Shown in pieces: positions 1 through 53,170 of a DNA stretch of 64,000 bases. This stretch comes from Octopus bimaculoides. Taxonomy: Eukaryota. Location: NCBI RefSeq assembly GCF_001194135.2, contig NC_068991.1, positions 53,554,308 through 53,618,307 of the forward strand, read 5' to 3'. The position numbers and the translations under genes are program-made. Position 1 is the first letter of the stretch, and each line of letters starts with the position of its first letter. The notes under the pieces are model-generated. The model ran no database searches. It was given only the letters and a program-made list of their open reading frames with translations, and had not been told where the DNA came from.

Positions 1-1732
1 TCTCGATAAAAACTAGTCTAGCAAATTAAATTTAGAGTAATTTTACAAAATTTCCCTACTTAAACTTAAGTCACTTAAATGTGATACTTTTCTGAATTTA
101 GCTGTTTTGCTTGGATAATGTGACTCCACCTTAAATTGTTTATTCCCTACTTTAGATAAGGACTTGCTTAGGAAGCAAATTCTTGTCAGATTTAATTAAG
201 ACCGAAGAAAATTTATTTTCAGTGAACTTCATCAATATAGAATCCAAAAAGTCCTTGGAGTGTCTTAATGACTCTAAATTTTGCTGACAGCTAAGTTTTA
301 CACATTTTTTCCACAGAATTTAATTTTGGGTGGTAGTTCAGGACATTTTTTTTAATTAAGATTTTTTTCAATACATATCAATTTGCTGTGCACTTGAAAT
401 ATCAAGCATTGGTAACTCCTGGCTGTTTTCAGATTGTGCCATATCTTGTCAGTTCCTTACTCCATTGGTAAACAATCTATAGATTCAACAACTTTTTAAA
501 AGTGTTATTAATAGCTTTGAGTTTTAAATGAAAAATCTCATATCCACTCTAGTAAGAGTTGTACTAGAATTCTTTTGTGTTGTGGGAAGGTCATTATGCT
601 AATAATAAACACACAAACTGGTTCTATTTCACTTCTCTATTTTTATTTTTCAATTAGTTAACATTTAAGCCGTAAACTAATTGATCGATTAATTGTTTGG
701 TCAATCAAGTAGGTTTGTCAAAGTCCTTTTGTTGCAGTCGTTACCTCATCAGTAACATGTTCTGTTCAAGTCTGTCTAGAAGTTTCTCATTTACTGTCAA
801 AGTTACAGGAAATGGTTTGATCATCAGATATACAACTGCATAAGATATGCAGTTTCTATATATTTCCAAGTGTTCTTGTCTTTTCTTGAGAGAGGATGTA
901 GATACCCATATCCTTGACCTCCTTTAGCTGTTCTGTAATGCAGATGTGAATTGCATGATTATCTTTGGTATCCCTTGTCAATCAAGTCAAGTATTACAGA
1001 TGATGATGTTGAGGTTATTATTGCATCATTGCTGAGAAGCAAAACAAAATCCTTCAGTTTTTTTTTATGTGAGATCTTTATCATCTGGAAAAGGTCAAAT
1101 GTCTTTTGATCATTCTATGGAATTTTTTTTTTTTTTCTGTAGTATGGCAGCAGTTTAACCATAATTTTCCTCCTTGAAACATTTTGTCAGTTATGNNNNN
1201 NNNNNNNNNNNNNNNNNNNNNNNNNNNNNNNNNNNNNNNNNNNNNNNNNNNNNNNNNNNNNNNNNNNNNNNNNNNNNNNNNNNNNNNNNNNNNNNNNNNN
1301 NNNNNNNNNNNNNNNNNNNNNNNNNNNNNNNNNNNNNNNNNNNNNNNNNNNNNNNNNNNNNNNNNNNNNNNNNNNNNNNNNNNNNNNNNNNNNNNNNNNN
1401 NNNNNNNNNNNNNNNNNNNNNNNNNNTATATATATGTTTGTATATATTTATGTGTGTCTTTGTATCTGTGTTTATCCTCCTGCCCATAGTTTGATAACCG
1501 ATGTTGGTGTGTTTATGTCCCACACATTTTTTTCTCTCTTTACTTTTTTGTTCTCTCTTCATTTTTTTCCCTCTTCATTTTTTTCCCTCTCAGCCCTTTC
1601 TGCCAAAGAGTGTAGACTTGAAATATCAAAGACTTTTCCATTCTTCCCAAGCATCATACTAATACACCTGCTTGTTGTTCCCTCATCTGTCTTCATTTTC
1701 TGTTTCCTGTAAATTTGAACTATATATATATA

Positions 1733-2982
1733 TTGGGACATCCCATAAATAATGCGATTTTTACAATTGCATGAACTAAAAGTCGGAGGAGGGATGGGAT
1801 AAACTACCTGCATCAATTTGTTATAAAAGCAGGTAGTAATTTTACCTTGTACTTATTCTCAGTGCAAGTTTTGAAGAGTGCAATTTGATTTTAACAGTTA
1901 TTTTTTCAAAGCTATAATGCGGGTGACAAAGGAGCACATTTGGCATATTTTGCTTTATGAGTTCAATAAAGGCAACAACACAATGGAAAGTGTGAGGAAT
2001 ATTAATGCAGTATATGGGGATCAGACAATAAGCATAAGCCAGTGTCAAGAAGATACGCCTCATCCAGGAAGATCCGTAAAGCTTGACGAGGACATCCTGA
2101 AAACTCTGGCAGAAGAAAATCCCATTGTAACTGCTGAGGAACTAGCAGAGATGCTTGGATTTGGTCATTCAAACATTCATCGACACCTGCGTGCCATCGG
2201 AAAAGTCAGCAAATTGGGTCAATGGGTTCCTCACAAACTTTCTGAGTAAATCGCATGTAGAGAGTGAATGTGTGCTCTTCTTTACTGTCACATTTCACGA
2301 ATGAACCTTTTTTGGACTGAATAGTGACTGGTGGTAAGAAATAGGTTCTCTATAAAAATGTCATGTGCCGAAGACAGTGGGTAGGGAAAGGAGAAAAACC
2401 AACACCCCAGACTAAAGACGCTCTTCACCCACGTAAGGTGTTGTTATCTGTTTGGTGGAATATGGAAGGTTTAGTCCACTTTGAACTTTTAAACCCAAAC
2501 CAAATGATAACAAAGGAGATCTTGTGCAAGCAGCTTGAGCGGCTTAAATCAGCGCTAGAAGAAAAATGACCTTGTTTGGTTTCAAAATGAAAGGTGTTCT
2601 TCCATCAGGATAATGCTCTGCCACATATAGTGAGGATGACATTCTAAAGGCTGGAGCAACTTGTATGGGAAATGATGCCCCACCCACCATTTTTGCTGGA
2701 CATTGCCCCATCTGATTATCATTTATTCCACAGTTTTCAAAATCATTTGGACAGAAAAGATATGAATTCTGTAGATGAGGTCAGAACAGTACTGGAGGCA
2801 TATTTTTCATGACAGACAAGTGAATTTTGGAAGAGGGGCCTTGCAAGTCTACCAGATAGATGCAAGAGCATTGTAAAAAATGAAGGAGAGTATATTTTAG
2901 ATTAAAAAAGAACTTCGTTTGTCTTAATTTTGAAAAATAAAAGAAGTATAAAAAAAACTGCATTATTTATGGGATGACCCAA
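1733..2982 (+). mobile_element. Full-length mariner (DD34D) DNA transposon, inactive
   Basis: TIRs TTGGGACATCCCATAAATAATGCG (from 1733) and its near-perfect reverse complement ending at 2982. TA on both sides, inserted in a (TA)n run. About 1.25 kb. Confidence 0.95.
1917..2905 (+). pseudogene. Mariner transposase pseudogene (stops, frameshifts, one internal deletion)
   Basis: Motifs MRVTKEHIWHILLYEF, HPGRS, WVPHKLSE, HPRKVLLSVWWN, FHQDNA and DIAPSDYHLF, spread across several frames. Confidence 0.93.
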
Positions 2983-6654: not shown

Positions 6655-6907
6655 ATGTGGTTTGGTTATGACTGTGTAGCTAAGAAGCTTGCTTTGCAAC
6701 TATGTGGTTTTGGGTTCAGTCCCATTATGTGGCACCTTGGGTAAGTGTTTCCTACTATAGCCATTGGTCAATCTATGCCTTGCAAGTGAATTTGGTAATT
6801 AGAAACTGTGTGGAAGCTCATGATATTTATGCATGTGTGTGTGTGTGTATGTATGTGTGTGTGTGTGTATATATGTATGTGTGTGTATATATGTATGTGT
6901 GTGTATA

Positions 6908-6940
<33 letters not shown>

Positions 6941-7458
6941 GTGTGTGTATATGTGTATATATATATGTGTGTGTGTATGTGTGTATATCTATGTATAATA
7001 TATATATATATATATATATAATAAATATGTATAATAGGCGCAGGAGTGGCTGTGTGGTTAGTAGCTTGCTTACCGACCACATGGTTCTGGGTTCAGTCCC
7101 ACTGCATGACACCTTGGACAAGTGTCATCTGCTATAGTTTCGGGGCAACCAAAGCTTTGTGAGTGGATTTGGGAGATGGAAACTGAAAGAAGCCTGTCGT
7201 ATATATGTATATATGTGTGNNNNNNNNNNNNNNNNNNNNNNNNNNNNNNNNNNNNNNNNNNNNNNNNNNNNNNNNNNNNNNNNNNNNNNNNNNNNNNNNN
7301 NNNNNNNNNNNNNNNNNNNNNNNNNNNNNNNNNNNNNNNNNNNNNNNNNNNNNNNNNNNNNNNNNNNNNNNNNNNNNNNNNNNNNNNNNNNNNNNNNNNN
7401 NNNNNNNNNNNNNNNNNNNNNNNNNNNNNNNNNNNNNNNNNNNNNNNNNNNNAAAGAG

Positions 7459-7498
<40 letters not shown>

Positions 7499-10544: not shown

Positions 10545-11095
10545 GTTATGGCGATCTTTCGATACCAATCCTCCCTTTTGCTTCAGCGTTTGTTTACATC
10601 AATTCGGCAATTTCCGTAATGAAAGAGGGAAAGGGCGTTAGTCAGCGACAGCTTTGATCTGTTAAGAACACATGCCAGTTATCTCTCTTTCCCCCCCTCT
10701 CTTAAGAACACATGCCAGTTATCTCTCGCTTTCTCTCTCTATCTCTAACCCTAACCTACATGTGTTTTTAAGAGAGTGTGAAAGAGATAGATAGAGAGAG
10801 AGAAAGCGAGAGAGTGTGAAAGAGATAGACAGAGAGAAAGCGAGAGAGTGTGAAAGAGATAGACAGAGAGAGAGAAAGCGAGAGATAAGTGACGTGTTTT
10901 TAAGAGAGGGGGAGGGAGGAGGAAAGAGAGATAACTGGCATGTGTTCTTAAGGGATGGGTTTTCCTGCTGTCTGCTTACCTAACAGATCAAAGCTGTCAC
11001 TGACTAACGTCCTTTCCCTCTTTCTTTACGGAAATTGCCGAACGATTGTCAAACGATTTGGCATTTAGAGAACTTGTACCGAAAGATTGCCCAAC
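10545..11095. mobile_element. Foldback MITE with ~150-bp imperfect inverted arms and internal (AG)-rich minisatellite
   Basis: TTCGGCAATTTCCGTAA...GCTTTGATCTGTTA at about 10603-10663 mirrored at about 10981-11043. Terminal GGCGATCTTTCGATAC versus GTACCGAAAGATTGCC. Confidence 0.85.
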
Positions 11096-16846: not shown

Positions 16847-17645
16847 CTCAGAAAGTATGAAACAAGGCAGTGAAACATGGGCCGTGACTGCTGAGGATAT
16901 GCGTAAACTTGCAAGGAATGAAGCCAGTATGCTCCGTTGGATGTGTAATGTCAGTGTGCATACTTGACAGAGTGTAAGTACCTTGAGAAAAAAGTTGGAC
17001 CTAAGAAGCATCAGATGTGGTGTGCAAGAGAGACGACTGCGCTGGTATGGTCATGTGGATGAGGATAGCTGTGTGAAAAATTGCCACACCCTAGCGGTTG
17101 AGGGAACCTGTGGAAGAGGTAGACCTAGGAAGACCTGGGATGAGGTGGTGAAGCCCGACCTTTGAACATTAGGCCTCACCAAGGCAATTACTAGTGATTG
17201 AAACCTTTGGAGATAAGCTGTGCTTGAGAAGACCTGGTAAGCCAAGTAAGACCATAACCTGTGGCCTATGCCAGGGGTGTAACCAACCCATTTATGTGTA
17301 CTTTTCCTTCATTGGATACTAAATTCTGCTTGCAATGACATGTTGAGACAAGTGAAATTGAAATCAAATTCGATGACAGCACTGCTTGACTAGCATCCGT
17401 GCTAGTGGAGTGCTAAGAGCACCATCCAAGCGTGATTGTTGCCAGTACCGCCTGACTGGCCCTCATGCCGGTGGCACGTAAAAGCACCCACTACACTCTC
17501 GGAGTAGTTGGCATTAGGAAGGGCATCCAGCTGTAGAAACTCTGCCAGATCAGATTGGAGCCTGGTGCAGCCATCTGGCTCGCCAGTCCTCAGTCAACTC
17601 GTCCAACCCATGCCAGCATGGAAAGCAGACGTTAAACAATGATGA
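16847..17645 (+). mobile_element. 5'-truncated RTE LINE (RT C-terminus plus 3' UTR, (GAT)n tail)
   Basis: Peptides LRSIRCGVQERRLRWYGHV and GTCGRGRPRKTWDEVV; tail GACGTTAAACAATGATGATG. Confidence 0.92.
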
Positions 17646-18886
17646 TGGTTAACAAGTAAAAATGCATAACAATAGATAAATCCAAGTTGAGGGGCGAGAA
17701 CCAGTAGAAATGCATGCTGCATATGTTTCTCAGCTAGCTGAAGCTATTGATGTAATAGTTATGCAATAGTTATGTTCTCTATACCTGCTACTCACTGCTT
17801 AAAGCTTATGAACCTCTTATATTGGGATGCCCAGATTGTGTATGTGTATATTTATATATATTCTTTCATTCATTTTAGTCATGTGGCTTGAGTCATGCTG
17901 GAGCACCACTCTGGTTTTGCACCATCACTTATGATTATTCTTCAGCTGATTTCCTCAGGCTGCAGGGTTTCACATCACCACTCCTGTATGTGCGTTTGTT
18001 TCGGCTGTTGGCTCATTTGGTGTATGAGAGAGTTTGATTCCGCTGCCCTTGTCTGTACCTCATGCCAGGTTGTATATATATATATATATCACAGTATTGG
18101 CCAGACATCAGATGCTGTTATACACTGCTGATCACAGTGCACTTCCAAATCTGTCTTGATTGTGCCATTTTTTTCCATCTTAACCCAAATTGCTGAACAA
18201 GATCAACTTCCCTTTGTTGTGGAGGCTTTTGCACTGGCCTTTACTGATCTCTTGGATACCACTTGCCAACTGCATGGGTCCATCTGTGAATCTTGTGATG
18301 TGTCTGGCCCAGTGGAACTTGTGCTTTCAATATTCTGCAATTACATTGTTCACTCCACTCCATTCTCTAATTGCTTCACTTTGAATATGTTCTCGTAATG
18401 ATATTCCTAGCATGGATCATTCTGGAGTAGATGCGAGATGTCAAATCTGGCCTGTTTGAACTTTGTCCTTTGCTTTGCAGCCAGTCAATGTTCTGTCCTC
18501 TTCATAGTAGCCCACACCTCACTTGCATATAAGGATGTGCATAAAACAAAGGTAGTCAATACCATATATGTAACTCCTTATATATTTTAGTTAATTTCTC
18601 TGTTTCATCTCCATGACTCATCATCTTCATGTTGAATTTATTTATAATCCTCAGGTGTCAGATTACTTTTAACTCTAATTCAGTTCAATTAAAAACAGTA
18701 GATTTTCGAATTTGGCTTACTCTGGTTCCATAAGGGGCAAGTGACTTCTTAGAATGTTAGAATCCTTACTGTATCACTTGTGTACTTTGACTCTTGCTAT
18801 TATTTTTGTTTACTAATATCTGGACTGTAATTTAATTGTATTTTTATTAAAGATGTATTTACAATATTAACAAATTGCAAAATTAA

Positions 18887-19195: not shown

Positions 19196-19215
19196 AGAGT
19201 ATCTTGGATTGCTGT

Positions 19216-19421
19216 ATGTCTACGCTTCGAGAATGGAAAAAGTTAGCCTGGTTTGGCACAATTGCGTTCACACTTTTTACGTTAATGAACTTTTTTCAAT
19301 ACACAAAGAACCAGACTAGCATCGATGCCAGAAATAATATTCCAGCTGGAAAGGAAAAAGGACATCTGAAGACCATCATCGACATGTTATGTCCAAACAG
19401 TGGGACACTCTGCACTGAGAG
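19216..19421 (+). CDS. Coding exon of a type II membrane, GT-A-like putative glycosyltransferase (cytosolic tail, TM anchor, stem)
   Basis: Acceptor TTTTAG at 19197, ATG at 19216. Peptide WKK-LAWFGTIAFTLFTLMNFFQY-TKNQT. Donor AG|GTTTGT at 19422 is phase 2, matching the 26207 acceptor. Confidence 0.8.
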
Positions 19422-19843
19422 GTTTGTTAGTCTTATTTCTATCCACCCATAATATGTAGCATTAGGAATGTTGCTTCTCTCAAGTACTTTTCCATCGTTG
19501 AATAAAGTTTTGAGCACCAAAACATTTTTGACTATGCTTATTTATTTCCATCATAAGTTCTTCAGATTTTACCATTTCAAAACACAAATACTTCATAATG
19601 CCCTGTTTCTCTTCTATAAGTCGATCACACTGACCCCAGTACTTAACTGGTACTTAATTTATTGACCCTAAAAGGATGAAAGGCAAAGTCGACCTTGGCG
19701 GAATTTGATCTCAGAACGTAACGACAGGTGAAATACCACTAAGCATTTTGCCTGGTATGCTAATGATTCTGTCAGCCTTATGAATGATTAATAATGAAAA
19801 AAAAATTGTGTAGATGTAGATGTATTCTTATTTATCTGAATTG

Positions 19844-19892
<49 letters not shown>

Positions 19893-20133
19893 TACTATTG
19901 TAAATATAAGGGTAATAAATTAGAATAATTTATTACCACTAGTTAGCATACATAAATAATAGTCATAAGACGTGACGTATTTTTAAAAATATAAGAGTGT
20001 ATAAAATATTTTCATACACAAAGAGGAGACCATTGGCAGGACTCTTTACATTCTAAAAAGGCCAGTTAAAGCTCAAACCACAAAAAGAATTCATGAGGCA
20101 TGCTGTTATAACACTAGAATGAAAAAAAAAATG

Positions 20134-20205
20134 AATTAGTTAATCCTGAACTTGAGTTTCGCTATTAACTGCCAAATCTGTAGCTCATCAGCAGAATTGC
20201 TAATT
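20134..20205 (-). ncRNA. Type I hammerhead ribozyme (structurally intact candidate)
   Basis: AAUUAG-C-AAUUCUG CUGAUGA GCUA-(16 nt)-UAGC GAAAC-UCAA-GUU CAGGAUU-AA-CUAAUU. Full core, 4-bp stem II, 7+6-bp stem I, short stem III. Confidence 0.7.
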
Positions 20206-20392
20206 AATGAATAATTATGTAATAATTTTAATTCTGAGGCTATATAGGATACAGTTTTAAATTTCTTTATTTACTGCTGGACTATATATCTATGCTCATG
20301 CACTAAGTTCAAACCCTTAATGGATAAAGATGTAACTGACTTACTTGCACACGTGTTTTCAGTATGTATTTGCAACTACATAATTATTCATT

Positions 20393-20479
20393 AATTAGTG
20401 ATTCCACTGATGAGCCACAGATTCCAAATTAGTGCATTTGGCAAATAATAGCGAAACTCAAGTTCAGGATTAACTAATT
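20393..20479 (+). ncRNA. Second, degenerate hammerhead copy in the right arm
   Basis: Core CTGATGA...GAAAC-TCAA-GTT is intact, but stems I and II have mismatches next to the core. Confidence 0.5.
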
Positions 20480-20629
20480 AAATTTTTTTTTTGTTCTAGT
20501 GTTATAATGGCATGCCTCATGAATTCTCTTTTTTGTGGTTTGGGCTTTAACCGGCCTTTTTAGCATGTAAGAAATCCTGTCAGTGGTCTCTTCTTTGTGC
20601 ATAAAAATATTTTATACACTTTTATATCT

Positions 20630-20672
<43 letters not shown>

Positions 20673-21862
20673 CATCATCATCATCGTTTAACGTCCACTT
20701 TCCATGCTAGCATGGGTTGGGCGATTTGACTGAGGACTGGTGAACAGGATGGCTGCACCAGGCTCCAGTCTGACCTGGCAGAATTTCTACAGCTGGATGC
20801 CCTTCCTAACGCCAACTACTCCGAGAGTGTAGTGGGTGCTTTTACGTGCCACCGGCACAAGGGCCAGTTAGGTGGTACTGGCAATGGCCACGCTCAAAAT
20901 GGTGTTTTTTACGTGCCACCAGCACAAGTGCCAGTGAGGTGACGCTGGTAGTGATCACACTCAAATAGTGCCATTTACATGTCACTGGCATGAAAGCCAG
21001 ACAGCTGCTCTGGCAATGATCACACTCGGACAGTGCTGTTAGTGCTCCGCTGGCACAGGTGCCGGTCATCGAATATGGTTCAATTACGATTTCGATTTCA
21101 CTTTCTCCAACAGGTCTTCGCAAGCAGAGTTTAGTGTGAAATGAAGGAGAGATTGGCATGGGTGCCAGTCGTCGAATTAAATTCGATTTCGATTTCCTCA
21201 ACAGGTCTTTGCAAGCGGAGTTTAGTGTCCAATGAAGTAAAGATACGAATAAGTGAGCTGGCTACACTTCTGGCAGAGGCCACGGATTATGGTCTCACTT
21301 GGCTTGCCGGGTCTTCACACGTACTGCATATTTTCAAAGGTCCCGGTCACTAGTCATTGCCTCGGTGAGGCCTAATGTTCAAAGGTTGTGCTTCACCACC
21401 TCATCCCAAGTCTTCCTGGGTCTACCTCTTCCACAGGTTCCCTCAACCACTATGGTGTGGCAATTTTTCACACAGCTATCATCACCATTCTTGCCACATG
21501 ACCATACCAGCGCAACCATCTCTCTTGTACACCACAACTGATGCTTCTTAGGTCCAACTTTTCTCTCAAGGTACTTACACTCTGTCGAGTATGCATATTG
21601 ACATTACACATCTATCGGAGCATACTGGCTTCATTTCTTGCAAGCTTACGCATGTCCTCAGCAGTCACGGCCCATGTTTCACTGCCATGCAGCATGGCAG
21701 TTCATACACATGCGTCATACAATCTGCCTTTTACTCTGAGCGAGAGGCTCTTTGTCACCAGCAGAGGTAAGAGCTCTCTGAACTTTGCCCAGGCTATTCT
21801 TATTCTAGCAGCTACACTTTCAGCACACCCTGCCCCGCTACTAACTTCGTCATCTAGATAGT
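20673..21862 (-). mobile_element. 5'-truncated RTE LINE
   Basis: Minus-strand translation RIRIAWAKFRELLPLL...ETWAVTAEDMRKL...RGRPRKTWDEVV. (GAT)n tail at 20673, next to (TA)n. Confidence 0.93.
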
Positions 21863-24764
21863 GGACTACTTCTAGTTTTTCTTCCNNNNNNNNNNNNNNN
21901 NNNNNNNNNNNNNNNNNNNNNNNNNNNNNNNNNNNNNNNNNNNNNNNNNNNNNNNNNNNNNNNNNNNNNNNNNNNNNNNNNNNNNNATATATATATATAT
22001 CAATAATAATAGTGATTGTTTCTTATTAGGAACAAGAGGGTTAATAGGACTGCAAGAGAAGTGCTCAAGTAAGTGAGACGAGTATAACAAACTTTTGTTG
22101 CAGAACAAACAACAAATTTATGGTCATCCAACTAATATAGCACATATCGAACATTTAATCACATATAAAGAAACATAATACTTTTTCTATACATAGAATA
22201 CGGAAGCACAAAATCACAGAAGATGAAACAATACTTGATTTAGACAGGTATAAAGAAAAAAAGTGAGTACAGTCTATCACGTATAAAAAAAATTTTTTAA
22301 ATTAGTAAATTAATACTTCAACGTCTAAAAAAATTTTTTTTACATTATAAAACCTAAAATAAAATAATAAATATATAAAAATATAAATAGATAAATATAA
22401 AAATACGTATATAAAAAACATAAATACATAAGGTATAGATAAATGTTCATCGATTAAGAATATTTTATGATTAAAAGTTACTTTTTAAGGTAGAAAGAAA
22501 CCTTTTAAGGTAAAAAGAAACCTTTTAAGAAAAGCTGGTATCCAAGCAAAAAAAAAACAACATAATTACAGTCCCTATGGCCATTTTAGGGGTTCATTAA
22601 CGTAGTCAATGCACGGGGGTGCATTACGGTAATGACTCCTTCGTCGGGGGAAAATAGTAACACCACATACCAATACGAGATTTCTTTGTAATTTGAGATC
22701 ATTGTGATGAATGGTCAGTTTACCCTAACACACCACTAAAAATTACTAACTTTATAAACTTATTTATTACATGGGTACATACACTTACTTAGAAGTCATA
22801 GTATATGTATATGTGTGCATACACACACACACTCATATAGACACATACGCTAACATGCTCGAGCGTATACAAGTACGCCTCATTATACACAGCTCTAAAT
22901 ACATGAATATACACATACATCTCCACACATATCTACAGTTACACCCTAGTAACCATATACATACACTCACATATCCACATATCCTTAAGCGCACGTACAG
23001 ATATAGATATATCTCCATGTATAGTATCCGCATACATGCACACACGTCCATCCATGTATACACACATACAGTACACCTTATAAGTGTATATCTTGTTTAT
23101 GAGTACATAACAGTTATATTTAATATACTATTCTCAATAGATCGAGTTACATATATTTAAAAAATTAAAAAAAAAAGTTTTTTTGATCTGTCTATGACAT
23201 TGAAATGAGGGATGATCAATAAAGGAAATGGTTTAAAAAGAAAAGAAATATGTGATAAAAGGGAGCAGCAAATTAACAATAAGTGAAATAATTGATATAG
23301 AGATATAAGGTTCTATAGGAATAGAGTTTTAAAAGAATCATTTTAAAAGAAATAGAGTTTTACAAGAATCGTTTTTAAAAAATTAATAGTGGAAGAGCAT
23401 TAGAAGTAGTAAAAATACTGATAGAATAAACCGGTGATATTAGAAAGATGTTGTAAAATATTAAAAATATCAAAACCCATCAGATATATTTGGAAATTCA
23501 TAAAAGATACATGACAAGATACATAAAAAGATAAATAATGATAGGTTACAAAGAGGTGAAAATAAGATGAAAGGGTAAAAAGTAAAGAGAAAATGTAAAA
23601 AAATAAAATAAAATGAAATGAAAATTAAGATGGAAGTTAAAAATAAAGTATGAAGAACAATTATAATAGTCTGTTGTGTCTGGGGAGAGTCATTTTCTCA
23701 TTGTGCCTTAAAATTTAACACACTCACCAGTAAAATTTCACTTATTTCTTATAATAGTAATAATATAATAGTAATAATATAGTGATTGGAAAAATATTGT
23801 GATTGGAGAAATTTCAGGTCTATCTACTTGTGTAAATTATATGTCATTGGGCAACTTCTACTATATTCCTATTTTAATTGTTTAGGAAGTGTTATATGAA
23901 GTTAAAAGAGTCTAGGTTCCTATCAACTAATGATTACTAGTATAATATTGTTATAAACATTATTGAAGTTATTAGTGCTAGCTAATAGGACTTATGCGTA
24001 TGGTAGTGTTATTCGAAATTTTAAAGTCAATCACTATATTATTTAGATATGTTCGTGCCAGGTAAAAGCACCACTGATGCTATATTTCTAGTGAGACAGC
24101 NNNNNNNNNNNNNNNNNNNNNNNNNNNNNNNNNNNNNNNNNNNNNNNNNNNNNNNNNNNNNNNNNNNNNNNNNNNNNNNNNNNNNNNNNNNNNNNNNNNN
24201 CATACATATATATATATATATATATCTAGCATAATGGTTTGACAAAAGAGACTGATAGAATAAGTACAATACTAGAAATATAGTACTGGGATTGCTTTGT
24301 TTTACTAAAAACCTTTCAAGGTGATGCCCCAGCATTGTCACAGTCCAATGACCGAAACAAGTAAAAGATAGATGAAAGATGTTATTTTTTCAAAATGGCA
24401 TTTGTCAGTGAACTGGACTTTTAATGAATTTTGTTAGCTTTTATTTAATATCTGATTGAGTAGATTTATGTATGAAAATCAATCTTGGCCTGACCATCCT
24501 GTTTTTATATGGATATCTAGGTGATTCCATTATTTATTATGTCCTTTTCCTTTTAAGAAGTGAGCATGTAATATGAAGGCAACATAGCCACTATTTCTAG
24601 CAGGTTCAGTCATCATATAGCAGACTCGCTTGTTGATTGTTTCTGTTTAACATACATAATTAATGATTCTTATTTGTGATAGTTTTATAAAAAGTATCAT
24701 TATTTTGATACTCTGATAATTAGAAATAGCTTTAATAACATTCATTTACTATTAGACTCAAGGC

Positions 24765-25190
24765 AGTATGCTGGCAGAATTGTCAGTATCTTGGACAAAA
24801 ACCTTAGCAGTATTTTGCCTGCCCTTATGTTCTGAGTTGAAATTCTGCTGAGGTCGACTTTGGTTTTCATCTATTCAGGATCAATAAAATAAATACCAGT
24901 TGATCACTGGGGTTGATGTAATCAACTAGTCTCCTCCCCCTAAATTTCAGGCCTTATGCCTATAGAAGAAAGGATTGTTAGACTTGAGTAGGTGACCTAG
25001 CAGAATCATTAACGTGCTAGACAAAATGCTTAGTGGCATTTCGTCTGTCTTTACATTCTGAGTTCAAATTCTACCAAGGTTGACTTTACCTTCCATCACT
25101 TTGGGGTAGATAAAATAAAGTACCAGTCAAGCTTGTCTCTTCTCAAAATTGCTGACCTTGTGCCAGAATTAGAGAGAGTTATTAAAATTT
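24765..25190 (+). mobile_element. Two tandem family B SINEs (GGCGGCGAGCTGGCAGAATCG head; (ATT)n tail), CpG-decayed
   Basis: GAGTTCAAATTC B box and the GCCTTTCATCC...GATAAAATAAGTACCAG body. Confidence 0.8.
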
Positions 25191-25483
25191 AAGAAATAGT
25201 TAGTTTTAATATGGTCCCAGGTCAGTTTGTTATTGAGCAGACCTGTGACATGCAGATATCCAGTTGAATGACCAAGAATGACCTATAAATCTGTTGTTTC
25301 TGGTATACTGTGCTTGTGTGTCGTTGAGAAGCATACTGCATGCTCTGACATCCAGTGATGCATTCTCGTGGGACTTACCTTGTCATCTTAAAAAAGGAAT
25401 ACAAAGAAACCAGCTGAATATTTCTGGGTGAAGTTGTTGAAGGAAAAGGTTGTGATTGTTGTTTATTTTCAGGTGAACCTTAA

Positions 25484-25703
25484 GCTCTTTAGCACTCAGG
25501 TTACTCTGTCAAATGTAAAGCTTATTCATTCACATCGTTTTCAAGTAGTCATGCATTATCTCATAACTATTATATTTTGATGATGTGATTGTTTATTGTT
25601 AGAATGACATTGTAGGGTAAGTGTGAGAGACTAGATCTGGTTGGTTTGAACATAAAACAGAATATCTGAGGGGCCTGATATGGTTGGTTTAAATGCTAAA
25701 GGG
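25484..25703. mobile_element. piggyBac-like MITE
   Basis: Ends AATGCTAAAGGG-TTAA; colinear with 30976-31191. Confidence 0.8.
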
Positions 25704-26206
25704 TTAAAGAGCTGACCTATAATTAAAGGTATTGCTGCTGTGATTATCTCATCTGCTTCTCAGATTGTGTATCTTGGACTACATCATTCAGTGTATCTTT
25801 TTCTTATTTAAGATGGTGGGGCATGTTTTCAATTGGAAATGGAGGTGAAGATTTGACTGCTATTTCTATCTGTTTAAATGACCACATAAAGCACCTTCTT
25901 TGTTCAGTTTTGTAGATTTGAGGTTCACAAACTTGTGGGTAGTTTACAGGATTTTTTTTTTTAAAGATGGTGGTGGGGTGGGAGAATATATTTTGCTGTC
26001 ATTAGACTGTGTGACCATACTGGAGCACTGCCTGGTAGAATTTTTAGTTGAATGAATCGATACCAGTATTTATTTTTTTTAAAGCCTGGTACTTATTCCA
26101 TTAATGTCTTTTGCTGAACTGCTGTGTTACAGGGATGTGAACCCACCAATACTGGTTTTGAGGTTTCTTGTTTTTATTAATCATAATTCTTCTTTTCCTT
26201 TTGAAG

Positions 26207-27149
26207 GATTGAAATGAATGGCAAAGAGGATATATTCTCTGACTTCAGTGAAAAATTACGACGCCATGTGGAACAATGTATTGAAAAGTTGCAAAACTTT
26301 CCTCCGGTTACTTACCAACACACCCTTTTGACTCTCTTCACAACATGGGATTATCATGATTCTAAGAAAGAACTCCATGAAAACACCGTCCGTAATTGGC
26401 TTGCATTAGGTCCGTCCGTCAAGGTGATTGTCTTCTCTACCAATCCTGAGACAAGAATTTTCTGTGAAAAGATTGGTTGTAATTACCAGTCTATCACTGT
26501 TCAGCGTGTAACTGGAGTGCCTTTATTGAAATCAATGTATTTAGAAGCACAGAAATCATTTGATAGCTTTTTTTATGCATTTGCCAATGCGGATATTTTA
26601 TTTGAAGCAAATCTAATCAAGACATTGGAGCGTGTTTTGTATATGTTTAATAATACAGAAAAGGCAATTTTGATAATTGGACAACGGACAAATGTTATGA
26701 ATGTTACCAAAGAAGAAGCTGTTCCAGTTGATTCTGTGACTAAAATTGCCCTGGACCGTGGAACTATATTCCGAACTGATGCTGAAGATTATTTCATTAC
26801 ATCAAGGCCATTTCCATGGAAAGCATTTCCAGATTTCATTGTTGGAAGTCCAGCATATGATAATTGGTTAGTTGCATATGCTATTCATAATAATTTCTTA
26901 ACGATAGATGCCACAAATTCTATCATAGCTGTACATCAGACCACGAGGTCTGGAAACTATGATGGGCATCACAAACGCTTTACGGATTATAATCTTAAAT
27001 TAATTAGAAAAATACGCTCACGGGTTAATGTCCTTGCTGGACACACAATTTGTACAAAATATTTTGCTCAAAAAGACTTTTGTGGGCTCACAGAAATTCT
27101 TCTGCGCAGAACAAATCCTTGTGCCAAGCCAAAATCCAGAAGAGGATGA
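26207..27149 (+). CDS. Terminal coding exon: putative GT-A-fold glycosyltransferase-like domain; spliced product 382 aa
   Basis: 311-codon ORF after the acceptor TCTTCTTTTCCTTTTGAAG. Motifs LLTLFTT, RNW, GVPLL, FANADILF (DxD-like), IGQRTNV, EDYFIT, PW, GSPAYDNWLV, IDAT, AVHQT. AATAAA signals follow the stop. Confidence 0.9.
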
Positions 27150-35860: not shown

Positions 35861-36584
35861 GGTCAATGAAAGGTATTTATAGGAAATTTCATAAAAAATT
35901 TCCCATTTTTCTGACAGCTATGAGGAAACAAAACCGACTCATGTGAATTTTCCGAAACTCCTCACTCCACCATCGGAAAAATATTTTTGCTACATACTCC
36001 GATATAATCAGAATCTACACCATCTGAAGCGTATTTGTAGGAAATGTCATTAAAAAATATCCATTTTTCTGGAAGATATGAGGCAATAAATTTGGGCGGG
36101 GCACACATGTACAAGAATGCCCATTTTCTTATTTAAACTCATTCGTTCAGGCATGAAAACAAAATGAAGAAACCAAAAGAAGATGATAAAAAAAATCTCA
36201 ACGAAAAGAGTAAATCTTGCAACAAAATTTAATCGTTGTTGCATGTTTTCAACCGTAAGAGAAAATTGAGGTTTTGTAATGGGTTAGTAAGGCATTATAA
36301 TTCTTTGACCCTTTCACAGATACCTAATCAAATCTCAGAGGAACCAAAAGCAAAGAAGATCACCTAAATAATTCCACGCTCAGGAATTACAAATATCTTG
36401 AGTGAATGTAAAATGACGTTAAATTTATTAAAAGCTCTACATAATTAACGTCCTTTCTACTAGGAATGTCGGAAAACTTAAAAATCACATCAGGATGCAA
36501 AATATCTGGACTGATACACGACAGATAAACGACGAGAAAGTAAATGTATTTATTTACTAGATTCAAACTGAATTAAACGGGATT

Positions 36585-36634
<50 letters not shown>

Positions 36635-37311
36635 ATCATGGATATATATATATATATATATTAGTTGGCATTAGACAGACGAGAAAGTAGGTAGAAACAG
36701 AACAAAACGGATTTAATGAAAGACAGCCGATCAACGTAAGGGCTATAAGGAAGAGAGGTTAATTGATGAAGAACGATGTTGCTATAAATTGATATAGGGA
36801 AATATAAAATATTTATGGATAAACTCAAAGCAGGATATAATGAACAGCTTTAGGTCTGTAGCAATTACGATATGGATTGCAGGATATTATTCACTTAAAG
36901 ATAAACATAAAATGTGGCTGTAAATATTTAAACATAATATTTATTGACTGACAAATAATATATGCATCTCTGATCATGAGTGTTAGTGGGGGAGCATCAT
37001 AACCAAGAATTGAGAGGAATTTTTGGCGGGTTTGAATAATTAACTTCTAGAAACGTAAGTGTTTCGTTCAATCATCCTCAAACAACCCTTTTTCAGAGAC
37101 CTTTGGAGAGGAGTGGGAAACTCGACCCGAAGAAATGTCTAACTGAGCTCCACCTGCAAAGTCATGTGCTGTTTATCTTGAAACGAGATCACTATGTCGA
37201 GCACATGCCAGATGTATCCTTATCAGACACGTAGTCACGATGGGCATATTGGGGTTCGTATATTTGTACCCCAGCGTCAATTTGATGGTTTGTGCTGTTC
37301 ACTCACTCACT

Positions 37312-37830: not shown

Positions 37831-38394
37831 AAGTAAATAAATGTTGTTTAAGTTGTTTAGTCTGGAGTTCAGCGTTCCGTCTATTTCTTTAATTTTTTAG
37901 TAGAAAGTCAGGTATACAATCTAAAGATGTATAACCCACTTTCTACTAAACATTCTTTTNNNNNNNNNNNNNNNNNNNNNNNNNNNNNNNNNNNNNNNNN
38001 NNNNNNNNNNNNNNNNNNNNNNNNNNNNNNNNNNNNNNNNNNNNNNNNNNNNNNNNNNNNNNNNNNNNNNNNNNNNNNNNNNNNNNNNNNNNNNNNNNNN
38101 NNNNNNNNNNNNNNNNNNNNNNNNNNNNNNNNNNNNNNNNNNNNNNNNNNNNNNNNNNNNNNNNNNNNNNNNNNNNNNNNNNNNNNNNNNNNNNNNNNNN
38201 NNNNNNNNNNNNNNNNNNNNNNNNNNNNNNNNNNNNNNNNNNNNNNNNNNNNNNNNNNNNNNNNNNNNNNNNNNNNNNNNNNNNNNNNNNNNNNNNNNNN
38301 NNNNNNNNNNNNNNNNNNNNNNNNNNNNNNNNNNNNNNNNNNNNNNNNNNNNNNNNNNNNNNNNNNNNNNNNNNNNNNNNNNNNNNNNNNNNNN

Positions 38395-38436
<42 letters not shown>

Positions 38437-38441
<5 letters not shown>

Positions 38442-39600
38442 AAGTAAGTTAAAAATTAAATGCACTTTTGTTTCCGTAATTTATTTTTAAAAAGCAGGAT
38501 ATGAACAATTATATTATTTTTCGACATAGTCTTCTTGCTTTTCGATGCACGTCTTCCAGTGGTCCACTAGCTTGCTTATTCCATCGGAAAAGATTTTCGG
38601 CTGGTCGCGCTGGATGTTTGAGCGGTCCAGAGAGGTAATAGCAGAAAGGGGTGAGATCTGAGCTATACGCAGGTTGCTCTAGCAACTCGATTTTTGTTAT
38701 CGAAACTCAATTTTTCAATGTTTCAACGGTGTGGGCGGCCGTATGAGGGCTTGCATTGTTATGCAACAATAACACTCGCTTTGACATTAGACCTCGGCTT
38801 TTGGTGCGAATTTTCTGGTGTTACTTTGTCCTCAGTATTTCACTGTAGCCTGCACTAGTAACTGTAGACCGCTTTGCTAGGTAATGTTCCAGTATAGGCA
38901 TTTTTGCGACCCCAAAATGGTTAGCATCACCTTTTCCAATGGAAGGTTGAGTCTTGAATTTCTTTTTTGCTGGCGATTCCGGCTGTTTCCATTCCATAAT
39001 ATGCCTTTTGGATCCTGGCTCAAAGTAATGGACCCAGGTCTCATCCCTTGGGACTATTCTCTCCAAAAATAACCTCGCCTTCATCGTTGTAGCGGTCGAA
39101 TAAACGTTGACAGATCTCCACATAATTGCGCATATGCGCTTCGATAAACTCTCTTGGTACCCCTCTCGCACAAACTTTACAAGGCAAAACTTGGCGTGGA
39201 TTATTTCATAAGCAGAATCATGACTAATCTGCAGAGAACATGTCACCTCATTGGTGGCCATTCATCGGTTCGCCAGAACCATCTCTCGAACTTGTTGAAT
39301 CTTCATGTCAGTGGTGGAGGCTATTGGGCGCCCTGCTTCCTCTTCGTGCTTCACGCTTGTCCGGCCATTTTTATATTTCACAATTCACTCACACACACTC
39401 CTATGCAGCAGAGCGATGTTCCTGTATGTAATGAAAGCCTGTGATAAATTTCAGCCCTTGACACATCTTCAGACCCCCCAAAAAATCGTACTAGTGATCT
39501 CTGTGCTTTCTTGGTGCTCATTGCCAGTGCAGCGGTCACGTTTTCTCTGTAACACAAGAAAGAAAACTTGAGCAATCAAAATCCATCTTCGGTTACGTAA
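38437..39600 (-). mobile_element. Decayed mariner transposon (second lineage)
   Basis: Minus-strand GRPIASTT, IVPRDETWVHYFEPGSK, KKFKTQPS and DNNASP...PDLTPSA-type motifs. One TIR-like end near 38437; the other was not resolved. Confidence 0.88.
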
Positions 39601-44040: not shown

Positions 44041-44607
44041 AAAGATAGGAATTATTTTGTAAACATCTATTGTCTACCAAATCCATTCACAAGGCTTTGG
44101 TCGGCCCGAGGCTATAGTAGAAGACACTTGCCCAAGGTGCCACACAGTGGGGCTCAATCCGGAACCATGTGGTTGGTAAGCAAGCTACTTACCACACAGC
44201 CACTCCTACGCCTAAAATTTTGGGAAGTGGGAGGGGATAGTCGATTACATCAACTCCAATACTTGACTGGTACTTATTTTATCGACCTCGACAGGTTTAA
44301 AGGCAATGTAAGCCTCGGTGGAATTTGAAATCAGAACGTAAAGAAGGACAAAATGCCGCTAAGCATTTTTCCAGGCGTGCGAACGATTCTGCCAGCTCTC
44401 CTCTTTGGTTTCAAATTTTTCTTTTGCTTTTATTTATTATTTTTGTTTTTTTACTTGTTTCTGTTATTAGACTACGACCATGCTGGGCGCACCGCCTTGA
44501 AGAATTTTTTGTCTAATGAGTCCACTCCAGTATTATTCTACCGGAATCTTTTGCCGAACCGCTATGTTGTAATGTGTGTGTGTGTGGGAGTCAAACACAA
44601 ACACAAA

Positions 44608-44702
<95 letters not shown>

Positions 44703-44864
44703 AGGCCTCTTTCAGTTTCCATCTACCAATTCCACTCACAAGGCTCTGATCGGGCCGAATCTGTAGTAGAAGACATTTCACGAAGATGCCACGCAGTGGG
44801 ACTGAACCCGGAACCATGTGGTTAGGAAGTACACTTCTTACTACACTGGCACGCCTGTGAAAAA

Positions 44865-52964: not shown

Positions 52965-53170
52965 TAATAATAATAAGAAAAAACAATGAACATCAGCAGA
53001 AACAGTGTCACATGAATTGCTTCCAACAGAACAGAAATCAAACATTTGTCGATAACTGTTCAATATTTGACTTTTGTCATAGAAAAATGTAACGGTTAAA
53101 TAGCTCAAGTTGATTTCATTGAGGGAGAATTCATGAAAAATTAGTAGAGCCTTATTTTCTGTTTTTAATC

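What the first reader, a model, noticed from the sequence alone, without database searches (positions are those of the whole stretch)
19978..20635. Intronic foldback element carrying two outward-facing hammerhead ribozymes
Seen: the ~245-bp inverted arms each contain a type I hammerhead. The minus-strand copy (20134-20205) has the full CUGAUGA/GAAA core, a perfect 4-bp stem II, a 7-bp stem I extended by 6 bp past an internal loop, and a very short quasi-palindromic stem III with a GUU cleavage triplet. The plus-strand copy (20393-20479), in the host pre-mRNA sense, keeps the core but has mismatches beside it. Known: Penelope-like elements carry minimal type I hammerheads with short palindromic stem III that often cleave as dimers, and they can have inverted pLTRs. 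Inference: this is a non-coding, ribozyme-bearing PLE or retrozyme-like family. The sense copy may have been disabled because it would cut the host transcript. Caveats: GUU is a suboptimal triplet, and the long foldback would sequester both motifs in a read-through RNA.
Basis: partly seen in the sequence, partly recalled or inferred. Interest (0 to 1): 0.85.

Follow-up and report, generated by a model that had tools for sequence, protein, structure and literature searches.

The report
Decayed hammerhead-ribozyme foldback in octopus intron
A 655-bp inverted-repeat insertion in an intron of an Octopus bimaculoides gene has a hammerhead-ribozyme-like motif in each arm; it is most likely a dead, truncated head-to-head copy of a Penelope-type retroelement, a known kind of ribozyme carrier, not a working or new ribozyme system.

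Summary
Window 19981-20635 is a foldback with arms of 242 and 260 nt (88% identical) and a 153-nt spacer. Each arm carries an outward-facing type I hammerhead (HHR) motif with an intact core. The minus-strand copy satisfies a complete descriptor; chance expectation is about 1e-4 per window. The plus-strand copy has three stem mismatches.

The window is Octopus bimaculoides. The element lies in the last intron of LOC106870604 (+ strand), so "intronic" and "sense copy" are both correct.

Support for a working ribozyme is weak. Rfam scores are about half the gathering cut-offs. The HHR fold is 9-20 kcal/mol above the predicted MFE, as monomer or dimer. Loop 3 is not palindromic. The two copies are inverted, so they cannot form a double hammerhead in cis, and read-through RNA folds into one long hairpin (-335 kcal/mol).

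No second copy was found in about 270 kb of octopod DNA, including the orthologous introns of O. sinensis and O. vulgaris, so covariation is untestable. The arm differences are mostly CpG decay, not targeted disabling.

The best reading is an old, inert, 5'-truncated head-to-head insertion of a Penelope-like or PLE-mobilised HHR-bearing retroelement into a (TA)n microsatellite. It is a known kind of element and of low to moderate interest.

The parts
19981..20635 (.). Whole foldback element (655 bp, 30.5% GC, CpG o/e 0.26, no ORF of 50 codons or more)
19981..20222 (-). Left arm. HHR-sense reads on the minus strand, from the centre outward.
   Evidence: 88.0% identical to the right arm over 242 nt
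20223..20375 (.). Non-palindromic spacer. Under the PLE model it is the extra length of the less 5'-truncated copy; which arm it belongs to is undetermined.
   Evidence: no similarity elsewhere
20376..20635 (+). Right arm. HHR-sense reads on the plus strand, which is the host pre-mRNA sense.
20134..20205 (-). Complete type I hammerhead-like motif. Stem I is 7 bp plus a 6-bp extension, stem II 4 bp, loop 2 16 nt. Helix III is ACU/AGU with a 2-nt loop, and the triplet is GUU. The predicted cleavage site is between 20149 and 20148.
   Evidence: Rfam HH9 26.9 bits, below the gathering score of 52
20393..20479 (+). Degenerate hammerhead-like motif. The core is intact. There are 2 mismatches at the base of stem I, 1 in stem II, and a 15-nt longer loop 2 containing a 6-bp CCAAAU/AUUUGG hairpin. 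The notional cleavage site is between 20464 and 20465.
   Evidence: Rfam Hammerhead_1 23.3 bits, below the gathering score of 34
19849..19893 (.). Left flanking microsatellite, (TA)16 followed by (CA)n
19894..19980 (.). Unmatched 87-nt stretch between the microsatellite and the left arm, with a perfect 11-bp hairpin at 19911-19937. Its relation to the element is unknown; it may be an insertion 'tail' or older sequence.
20633..20672 (.). Right flanking (TA)20 microsatellite directly abutting the right arm, followed by the (ATC)5 end of a SINE-like repeat
19198..19422 (+). Upstream coding exon of the host gene LOC106870604 (Octopus bimaculoides)
   Evidence: 100% tblastn matches of isoforms X1-X3; conserved in Argonauta
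26205..27149 (+). Last coding exon of the host gene. The intron 19423-26204 contains the element.

Best explanation
The element is an old, non-coding relic of a hammerhead-bearing retroelement of the Penelope-like (PLE) type. It may derive from pLTR-region sequence of a PLE or from a PLE-mobilised non-autonomous derivative.

Two 5'-truncated copies were laid down head to head in a (TA)n microsatellite inside the last intron of O. bimaculoides LOC106870604. Each copy's 3' end faces outward. PLE enzymes nick and extend both target strands, which yields this geometry: an inverted repeat, sense HHRs pointing outward, and an unpaired centre where one copy is longer.

In the source element the HHR, with its very short helix III, would have processed multimeric transcripts as a double hammerhead. 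At this locus the motifs do nothing as ribozymes:
- They sit on opposite strands, so no RNA carries two sense copies.
- The host-sense copy has three stem mismatches.
- In the pre-mRNA the two arms pair into a hairpin of about 250 bp.

Since insertion the arms have drifted neutrally, mainly by CpG decay. The only likely present-day effect is a long intronic dsRNA hairpin.

Shown: the anatomy, orientation, intron location, absence from the sister species' introns, decay pattern and fold predictions. Inferred: PLE origin, the double-strand priming mechanism, dimeric cleavage in the source element, and inertness here.
For: The HHR motif is real and unlikely by chance.
- Both arms have the full core, and the left copy has a complete type I helix set.
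- Chance expectation is about 1e-4 per window at the observed quality, and 0.006 for a relaxed descriptor.
- It is the only hammerhead-clan hit in the window.

The geometry matches published PLE features.
- HHRs lie in the terminal repeats, and pairs of HHRs 100-700 bp apart on opposite strands have been reported (PMC4209133). Here the predicted cleavage sites are 316 nt apart.
[quoted passage not shown] 6 and Fig. 1-2 legends).
- PLE protein cleaves and extends both strands, and reverse transcription starts roughly 85-125 nt downstream of the HHR cut site (PMC11167929). Here the arms end 168-171 nt downstream of the predicted site.
- The right arm directly abuts (TA)20, and (TA)16 lies 100 nt from the left arm. 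Such tracts occur only about once per 4.6 kb in the window.

Penelope elements are among the most abundant TE groups in octopus genomes (PMC8967140, PMC13282606).

The element is non-coding and has low GC.

Decay looks neutral. The arms are 88% identical with a 23:6 transition:transversion ratio and 4 CA/TG discordant sites, including both stem I differences. CpG o/e is 0.26.

Inertness is supported by the opposite-strand arrangement, by a read-through RNA MFE of -334.6 kcal/mol as one hairpin with z=-29.6, and by an HHR fold disfavoured against the MFE.

The element is not conserved at the orthologous intron in O. sinensis or O. vulgaris.
Against: - No homology to any PLE could be shown. No PLE RT/EN sequence or other HHR exists in about 270 kb sampled, and no octopus TE library was available.
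- No second family member was found, so HHR conservation and covariation are untested.
- Rfam scores are well below the gathering thresholds.
- The motif resembles the 'canonical' metazoan type I HHR of retrozymes more than the min-HHR typical of animal PLEs. It has a 4-bp rather than a long helix II, and no extra nucleotide between A9 and 10.1 (PMC4209133).
- Loop 3 (CA) is not palindromic as published dimer-type HHRs require, unless it is a decayed CG.
- The unmatched stretch on the left is 87 nt, longer than the 30-40-bp PLE tail.
- Long terminal inverted repeats in TA-rich DNA are also what a DNA-transposon MITE looks like.
- Arm divergence (12%) is at least as large as the divergence of the flanking intron from O. 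vulgaris (6-8%). This sits awkwardly with the element's absence from that species.
Confidence: 0.55

Rival explanations
1. The element is a non-autonomous DNA transposon (a MITE or foldback element with about 240-bp terminal inverted repeats, for example a Tc1/mariner-type TA-targeting derivative). Its arm merely resembles a hammerhead by chance. The inverted repeat is the transposase substrate, and RNA catalysis was never involved.
For: - Long inverted arms with a short unique centre, no ORF, and ends embedded in TA-rich sequence with a possible TA duplication.
- Mariner-like transposase fragments occur elsewhere in the window (read by eye), and Tc1-Mariner elements and MITEs are abundant in octopus (PMC13282606).
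- Rfam scores are sub-threshold, and the HHR fold is not thermodynamically favoured.
Against: - A complete type I HHR descriptor match is expected only about 1e-4 times per 64-kb window, i.e. about 1e-6 per 650-bp element.
- There is no internal direct-repeat (IR/DR) structure in the arms.
- The termini do not begin with the CAGT-type ends of Tc1-like elements (my knowledge of the family).
- No clean TSD can be read.
- The sense orientation of both motifs is outward, as in PLE insertions.
Confidence: 0.15
2. It belongs to a live ribozyme-bearing, retrozyme-like family. The minus-strand HHR still self-cleaves, as a dimer in trans or with cofactors, in antisense transcripts. The host-sense copy was inactivated by selection to protect the LOC106870604 pre-mRNA.
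For: - The left copy has no stem mismatch and an intact core.
- The only CpG kept in both arms is C11.1-G12 of the HHR. By my own rough estimate from the site counts, the chance of that is about 0.1.
- All three stem defects are in the host-sense copy.
- Metazoan HHRs with weak helix III are known to need dimers and to show low activity in vitro (PMC4209133, PMC7229834).
Against: - There are no tandem direct repeats, which is the defining retrozyme layout (PMC7229834).
- The two copies cannot pair as a double hammerhead in cis.
- The helix III string ACUCAAGU is not self-complementary at its centre.
- The HHR fold scores -6.5 against an MFE of -15.9 kcal/mol as monomer, and -17.0 against -37.2 as dimer.
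- The differences that 'disable' the sense copy are ordinary CpG-decay transitions. The same process produced the U2.2 that makes the left stem perfect.
- HHR-region divergence equals the arm average.
- One locus cannot show selection.
- No family copies were found.
Confidence: 0.07
3. It is a local palindromic duplication or rearrangement of ordinary intronic DNA, not a mobile element. The HHR-like string is a coincidence that the inversion copied.
For: It is a single copy in all DNA that could be searched. The whole 4.6-kb segment around it has no counterpart in sister species, so local rearrangement has occurred.
Against: This needs the same 1e-4 coincidence for the motif. It does not explain the (TA)n tracts bracketing the unit. 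A non-palindromic 153-nt centre with clean arm boundaries is more typical of two joined copies than of a snap-back duplication.
Confidence: 0.08
4. It is an exapted host intronic ribozyme, analogous to the amniote HH9/HH10 hammerheads, regulating processing of the LOC106870604 pre-mRNA.
For: The best Rfam match is to the HH9 model. It is intronic, with one copy in mRNA sense.
Against: - It is absent from the orthologous introns of O. sinensis and O. vulgaris, although flanking intron sequence aligns at 92-94%.
- The sense copy is the degenerate one.
- It is sequestered in a long hairpin.
- The HH9 match reflects shared type I topology only, at half the gathering score.
Confidence: 0.02

Closest known systems
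Hammerhead ribozymes in the pseudo-LTRs of Penelope-like elements (Cervera & de la Pena 2014, PMC4209133; Craig et al. 2021, PMC8557442; PMC11167929)
   Same: - Type I topology with a very short helix III that implies dimeric action.
- The HHR lies in a terminal repeat, about 100-200 nt from the insertion's 3' end.
- Frequent heavy 5' truncation, and inverted head-to-head copies forming inverted repeats.
- Pairs of HHRs 100-700 bp apart on opposite strands.
- (TA)n microsatellite targets.
- Most genomic copies are isolated relics.
- Penelope elements are abundant in octopus.
   Different: - No RT/GIY-YIG ORF here or nearby, and no demonstrated sequence homology to any PLE.
- Helix II is 4 bp without the unpaired nucleotide after A9, so it is not the animal 'min-HHR' consensus.
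- Loop 3 (CA) is not palindromic.
- The unmatched end piece is 87 nt rather than a 30-40-bp tail.
Metazoan non-LTR retrozymes (Cervera & de la Pena 2020, PMC7229834; bioRxiv 10.64898/2026.07.22.740005)
   Same: - Non-coding and of low GC.
- 'Canonical' type I HHR proportions: helix I of 6-7 bp, helix II of 4 bp, helix III of 2-3 bp.
- Unit size of a few hundred nt.
- Proposed to derive from PLE pLTRs and to be mobilised by PLEs.
- Dispersed monomer copies exist, and intronic copies occur, though they are depleted there.
   Different: Retrozymes are defined by head-to-tail tandem repeats that give circRNAs. Here the two copies are inverted and there is no tandem unit. Tertiary loop-loop contacts were not identifiable. 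Expression is unknown.
Amniote intronic hammerheads HH9/HH10 (Rfam RF02275)
   Same: Best-scoring Rfam model; type I; extended helix I with an internal loop; located in an intron.
   Different: The score is half the gathering threshold. There is no orthologous conservation even within Octopus. The sense copy is degenerate. The motif is part of a repeat, not a unique conserved element.
Long-TIR MITEs / foldback DNA transposons
   Same: Two arms of about 240 bp in inverted orientation, a short spacer, no ORF, and TA-rich insertion context.
   Different: It carries a full hammerhead motif in each arm, has no readable TSD or canonical termini, and no other copies were found.

Membership tests
Hammerhead ribozyme, type I (Rfam clan CL00010) | Conserved core C3-U4-G5-A6-N7-G8-A9 ... 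G12-A13-A14, A15.1-U16.1 pair, H17 not G | tested here: met
   Both arms read CUGAUGA ... GAAA ... U-U. G10.1-C11.1 is also present.
Hammerhead ribozyme, type I (Rfam clan CL00010) | Three helices in type I order closing the core | tested here: inconclusive
   The left copy has stem I of 7 bp (+6), stem II of 4 bp and helix III of 3 bp. The helix III loop is only 2 nt, which cannot close as a hairpin, so it could form only in a dimer. The right copy has 3 mismatches.
Hammerhead ribozyme, type I (Rfam clan CL00010) | Score at or above the Rfam gathering threshold | tested here: not met
   HH9 scores 26.9 against 52, and Hammerhead_1 scores 23.3 against 34. Nothing appears in gathering mode.
Hammerhead ribozyme, type I (Rfam clan CL00010) | Stems supported by covariation among homologues | not testable with these tools
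   Only the two arms exist in all accessible DNA. Their differences break pairs in one copy and are CpG-type changes.
Hammerhead ribozyme, type I (Rfam clan CL00010) | Active fold energetically accessible | tested here: not met
   HHR stems I+II score -6.5 against an MFE of -15.9 kcal/mol. The double hammerhead scores -17.0 against a dimer MFE of -37.2. An alternative hairpin AUUAGCA/UGCUGAU buries the CUGAUGA box. Tertiary contacts are not modelled.
Hammerhead ribozyme, type I (Rfam clan CL00010) | Site-specific self-cleavage | not testable with these tools
   Needs an in vitro transcription or cleavage assay.
Penelope-like element (PLE) | ORF with telomerase-like RT and GIY-YIG endonuclease | tested here: not met
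   No ORF of 50 codons or more lies in the element. A GIY-YIG regex search and tblastn with Poseidon_Ac protein found nothing in 270 kb. A heavily 5'-truncated copy would lack the ORF, so this excludes an autonomous PLE, not PLE origin.
Penelope-like element (PLE) | HHR in the terminal repeat (pLTR), sense with the element, near its 3' end | tested here: inconclusive
   Each arm has a sense HHR 168-171 nt from its outer end. Whether the outer end is a retroelement 3' end is inferred, not shown.
Penelope-like element (PLE) | Inverted 5'-truncated copy head to head, forming inverted repeats | tested here: met
   The arms are inverted with outward sense around a non-palindromic spacer. This matches the description in PMC8557442 sect. 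6, but a MITE would give the same structure.
Penelope-like element (PLE) | Insertion into a microsatellite such as (TA)n; optional 30-40-bp tail at one end | tested here: inconclusive
   (TA)20 abuts the right arm. (TA)16(CA)n lies on the left but is separated from the arm by 87 unmatched nt, longer than a typical tail.
Penelope-like element (PLE) | Sequence homology of the arm to a PLE pLTR of the same genome | not testable with these tools
   No octopus TE library or whole-genome DNA search was available.
Metazoan non-LTR retrozyme | Head-to-tail tandem repeats (150-450-bp units), each with a sense type I HHR | tested here: not met
   There is no direct or tandem repeat of the unit; the two copies are inverted.
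Metazoan non-LTR retrozyme | Low GC, non-coding | tested here: met
   GC is 30.5% and there is no ORF.
Metazoan non-LTR retrozyme | Expressed as small circular RNAs | not testable with these tools
   Needs RNA data.
MITE / foldback DNA transposon | Terminal inverted repeats with defined ends and a target-site duplication | tested here: inconclusive
   Long inverted arms are present. The ends fade into AT-rich or (TA)n sequence, so no TSD can be read.
MITE / foldback DNA transposon | Multiple dispersed copies | tested here: inconclusive
   There are none in about 270 kb. The whole genome was not searchable.
Exapted intronic hammerhead (HH9/HH10-like) | Conserved at the orthologous intron across related species | tested here: not met
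   It is absent from the O. sinensis (L002) and O. vulgaris (L003) introns, although the flanks align at 92-94%.

The most novel reading that the evidence does not exclude
The foldback itself could be the functional unit of an undescribed cephalopod class of ribozyme-bearing mobile element. In that case the family consensus would keep two outward-facing, dimer-competent hammerheads, with CpG-restored helix I (CCG/CGG) and a perfectly palindromic helix III (ACUCGAGU). Transcripts started in the centre or read in from either side would be trimmed on both strands. That would be an inverted-repeat counterpart of the tandem retrozyme, possibly moving as DNA rather than through a circRNA.
Probability: 0.06. 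Interest if true: 0.55.

Novelty: new member of a known kind. Interest (0 to 1): 0.25.

Why it matters
If the reading is right, this is an ordinary fossil of a known association between hammerhead ribozymes and Penelope-type retroelements. It adds a cephalopod example; the searched literature contains no report of hammerheads in cephalopods.

Its practical value is as a seed. The arm can be used to pull out the family from the octopus genome and to ask whether octopus PLEs or retrozymes carry canonical rather than minimal HHRs.

The locus also places a near-perfect hairpin of about 250 bp inside a pre-mRNA, in an animal known for heavy A-to-I editing. That makes it a plausible ADAR substrate. 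It does not open a new mechanism or settle an open question.

Tried and rejected
1. Other copies of the element. I ran blastn with small words against the window, then against L001-L004 and L006. I also ran nhmmer --max with an arm profile, the spacer and the left extension against 272 kb. The only hits were the element itself, its identical copy in L004, and microsatellites.

2. Family copies through spurious ORFs in the protein collection. I aligned the 44/45-codon stop-free frames that both arms share and searched with the alignment. No candidates came back. I did not repeat this with the HHR-frame peptide, because even the window's own ORF is not indexed.

3. Exact-pattern scans. GCGAAACTCAAGTTCAGGAT gave one GC-rich bacterial chance match in metagenome contigs and none in viral contigs.

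4. Orthologous empty site. The flanks align to O. sinensis and O. vulgaris only up to 19619 and from 24225 onward. Insertion boundaries and a TSD therefore could not be defined.

5. A nearby PLE. A GIY-YIG motif regex and tblastn with the published Poseidon_Ac protein found none. I ran no further search on Poseidon_Ac, because the 120 listed hits would be vertebrate PLEs, not octopus ones.

6. Other hammerheads in the sampled octopod DNA. Canonical and min-HHR descriptors found none.

7. tRNA-derived SINE origin. ARAGORN found nothing.

8. Exapted host ribozyme. Rejected for lack of orthologous conservation.

9. Selection as the reason the sense copy is disabled. Rejected as unsupported, because the changes are CpG-decay transitions at the arm-wide rate.
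Full report
**What is there**

- A self-reverse-complement alignment gives a left arm at 19981-20222 and a right arm at 20376-20635, around a 153-nt spacer that is not palindromic.
- In HHR-sense orientation the arms align over 242 positions at 88.0% identity. There are 23 transitions, 6 transversions, a 15-nt indel and a 3-nt indel.
- The element is 30.5% GC and strongly CpG-depleted (o/e 0.26, against 0.54 for the window).
- It has no open frame of 50 codons or more on either strand.
- A (TA)20 tract directly abuts the right arm. On the left, a (TA)16(CA)n tract is separated from the arm by 87 unmatched nucleotides that contain a perfect 11-bp hairpin.

**The hammerhead motifs**

On the minus strand, 20134-20205 reads:

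AAUUAG-C-AAUUCUG-CUGAUGA-GCUA-(16 nt)-UAGC-GAA-ACU-CA-AGU-U-CAGGAUU-AA-CUAAUU.

This gives the full conserved core and the G10.1-C11.1 pair. Helix II is 4 bp. Helix I is 7 bp with one G.U, continued by 6 bp after a small internal loop. Helix III is the A15.1-U16.1 pair plus two more pairs around a 2-nt loop. The triplet is GUU.

The plus-strand copy (20393-20479) has the same core and the same 3' half. It differs in three ways:
- its 2.x strand is GAUUCCA, giving two mismatches next to the core;
- helix II is GCCA/UAGC, with one mismatch;
- loop 2 has 15 extra nucleotides that form a 6-bp hairpin.

Both motifs read from the centre outward, and the predicted cleavage sites are 316 nt apart.

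**Is it more than chance?**

Rfam finds nothing at gathering score. With permissive thresholds:
- The left copy matches Hammerhead_HH9 at 26.9 bits (gathering 52). E is 2.2e-4 in an 801-nt search and 0.018 for the whole window.
- The right copy matches Hammerhead_1 at 23.3 bits (gathering 34).
- These are the only hammerhead-clan hits in the window. The other sub-threshold hits there are microsatellite artefacts.

A type I descriptor I wrote finds this site and no other in about 247 kb of octopod DNA on both strands. In 1200 Markov-1 simulations of the window, the relaxed descriptor hit 0.0058 times per window. The observed quality never occurred, which extrapolates to roughly 1e-4 per window.

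So the motif is very unlikely to be a coincidence within this window. A few such coincidences would still be expected across a 2.7-Gb genome, and formal Rfam membership is not met.

**Where it is**

The 311-codon ORF at 26214-27149 is 96% identical to an Octopus sinensis protein. It falls in one 90% cluster with O. bimaculoides LOC106870604. The chromosome-level O. bimaculoides locus (L004) contains the element with 100% identity.

Exons of all three isoforms map to 19198-19422 and 26205-27149 on the + strand. The element therefore lies about 560 nt into the last intron, and the right-arm motif is in pre-mRNA sense. "Intronic" and "host sense" are confirmed.

In Argonauta the introns of this gene together total only about 290 nt.

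**Relatives**

The orthologous introns of O. sinensis (L002) and O. vulgaris (L003) align with the window at 92-94% up to 19619 and again from 24225. The 4.6 kb in between, which holds the element, has no counterpart in their 1.46-kb segment.

Neither blastn nor nhmmer finds any other copy of the arms, spacer or left extension. The DNA searched was:
- the window
- 37 kb of additional O. bimaculoides sequence
- L001-L003
- a paralogue locus.

Attempts to reach family members elsewhere all failed. These were a search of the protein collection with the stop-free frames the arms share, and exact-pattern scans of metagenome and viral contigs. No PLE coding sequence and no other hammerhead, canonical or minimal, occurs in the sampled DNA.

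This is the main gap.

**What the two arms say**

Four of the differences between the arms are CA-versus-TG discordant dinucleotides. That is the footprint of an ancestral CpG decaying independently in each arm. These four sites include both stem I differences: UG in the left copy against CA in the right copy at positions 2.2-2.1, and CA against UG just upstream.

The inferred ancestor read ...AGCGAUUCCG|CUGAUGA.... Two consequences follow:
- The right copy's mismatches next to the core are ordinary CpG decay.
- The left copy's perfect U2.2-A1.2 pair is a product of the same process.

Divergence inside the HHR (about 10%) equals the arm average. Keeping all 11 core bases in both arms has a chance probability of about 0.24.

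The one CpG retained in both arms is C11.1-G12. That is mildly unexpected (about 0.1, my own estimate from the site counts) but not significant. Nothing here calls for selection against the sense copy.

If two concordant CA dinucleotides are also decayed CpGs, the ancestor would have had a fully paired helix I and a perfectly palindromic helix III (ACUCGAGU). About two such sites are expected from the discordant count. This is a prediction for the family consensus, not a result.

**Could it work now?**

Predicted folding argues against it.
- The left monomer's MFE (-15.9 kcal/mol) is an alternative structure in which AUUAGCA pairs with UGCUGAU and buries the catalytic box. The hammerhead stems score -6.5.
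- A double hammerhead scores -17.0, against -37.2 for the best dimer.
- The CpG-restored version does not change the ranking.

These energies ignore tertiary contacts.

The 2-nt loop cannot close helix III in a monomer. The helix III string is not self-complementary at its centre. Because the two copies are on opposite strands, no transcript of this locus carries two sense copies.

The + strand RNA of 19975-20640 folds into one long hairpin of -334.6 kcal/mol (z=-29.6). Many of the transition differences become G.U pairs in it.

**Best explanation**

Published descriptions of Penelope-like elements match the anatomy point by point.
- HHRs lie in the terminal repeats, most genomic motifs are isolated relics, and pairs occur 100-700 bp apart on opposite strands (PMC4209133).
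- The PLE protein cuts and extends both target strands and starts reverse transcription about 100 nt downstream of the HHR (PMC11167929).
- Penelope elements are among the abundant repeat groups in octopus genomes (PMC8967140, PMC13282606).

I therefore read the element as an old, 5'-truncated, head-to-head double insertion of a PLE-type HHR-bearing retroelement into a (TA)n tract. The source may have been a PLE-mobilised non-autonomous relative; see bioRxiv 10.64898/2026.07.22.740005 for the PLE-retrozyme link. The copy is now inert and has been decaying neutrally.

The PLE assignment rests on geometry and context, not on sequence homology, so I give it 0.55.

**Rivals**

- A long-TIR MITE with a chance hammerhead look-alike fits the inverted arms and the TA-rich ends. 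It requires a coincidence of about 1e-6 per element (0.15).
- A live retrozyme-like family with a selectively disabled sense copy fails the tandem-repeat criterion and is not needed to explain the differences (0.07).
- A local palindromic duplication is possible, because no other copy was found (0.08).
- An exapted HH9-like host ribozyme is excluded by the lack of orthologous conservation (0.02).

**Unexplained**

- The arms differ by 12%, at least as much as the flanking intron differs from O. vulgaris, yet the element is missing there. Either that segment was lost or replaced in the other lineage, or the arms were not identical at birth.
- The 87-nt unmatched piece on the left is longer than a PLE tail.
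- The motif looks more like the canonical retrozyme-type HHR than the animal PLE min-HHR.

**Verdict**

The element is a new (cephalopod) member of a known kind, most likely a dead one. Interest is 0.25.

Noticed in passing
window 20672-21126, and inverted at 17385-17647: A SINE-like repeat starts with (ATC)5 right after the (TA)20 tract. It has many copies in both orientations in the O. sinensis and O. vulgaris loci (82-87% identity). It contains an internal 67-nt tandem duplication at 20840-20965.
   Followed up: partly
window 19617-19776; L003 37951-42257; L002 41375-45675: A repeat unit of about 160 bp lies just upstream of the element. The same unit occurs many times, apparently in arrays, downstream of the orthologous gene in O. 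vulgaris and O. sinensis.
   Followed up: no
window 21278-21865, and inverted at 17000-17266: Another dispersed repeat, about 88% identical to several places in L002 and L003. Together with the items above it shows that the 4.6-kb lineage-specific part of the intron is a stack of transposable-element insertions.
   Followed up: no
window 19423-26204, versus L001 10001-11439: This host-gene intron is 6.8 kb in O. bimaculoides. In O. vulgaris and O. sinensis the unalignable middle part of the same intron is 1.46 kb rather than 4.6 kb. In Argonauta hians all introns of the gene together total only about 290 nt. The host protein belongs to a nucleotide-diphospho-sugar-transferase-like family with many mollusc paralogues.
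   Followed up: partly
window 10718-10815: A hairpin of about 90 nt gives sub-threshold matches on both strands to several unrelated miRNA precursor models (mir-4716, MIR1023, mir-320), with E from 0.004 to 0.4. It is probably a small palindromic repeat.
   Followed up: no
window 1878-2249 (+), 38821-39261 (-), 51733-52092 (+), 54789-55091 (-): ORF fragments whose translations look like mariner/Tc1-type transposase pieces. This is by eye and was not tested against Pfam.
   Followed up: no
window 47184-48890 (-), 61479-62907 (+): ORF fragments that look like non-LTR (LINE-type) reverse transcriptase. This is by eye. They are not PLE-like, since tblastn with Poseidon_Ac found nothing.
   Followed up: partly
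window 40499-40622, 6829-7024, 44541-44734, 36584-36660: The mir-297, mir-466 and mir-3149 hits, and the SCARNA7 hit at 44541-44734 (28 bits against a gathering score of 65), all lie far below their gathering scores. They fall on (TG)n, (TA)n or (CA)n microsatellites or run across them, and are composition artefacts.
   Followed up: yes
window 19911-19937: A perfect 11-bp hairpin, GGTAATAAATT-AGAAT-AATTTATTACC, lies in the unmatched stretch left of the foldback. Its origin is unknown.
   Followed up: no
window 1190-1440, 7220-7460, 37950-38420, 46250-46570, 53170-53810 (approximate): Runs of N (2299 in total) sit next to microsatellites, as in a short-read draft assembly. The window matches the 2015-type O. 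bimaculoides scaffold rather than being cut from the chromosome-level assembly.
   Followed up: no
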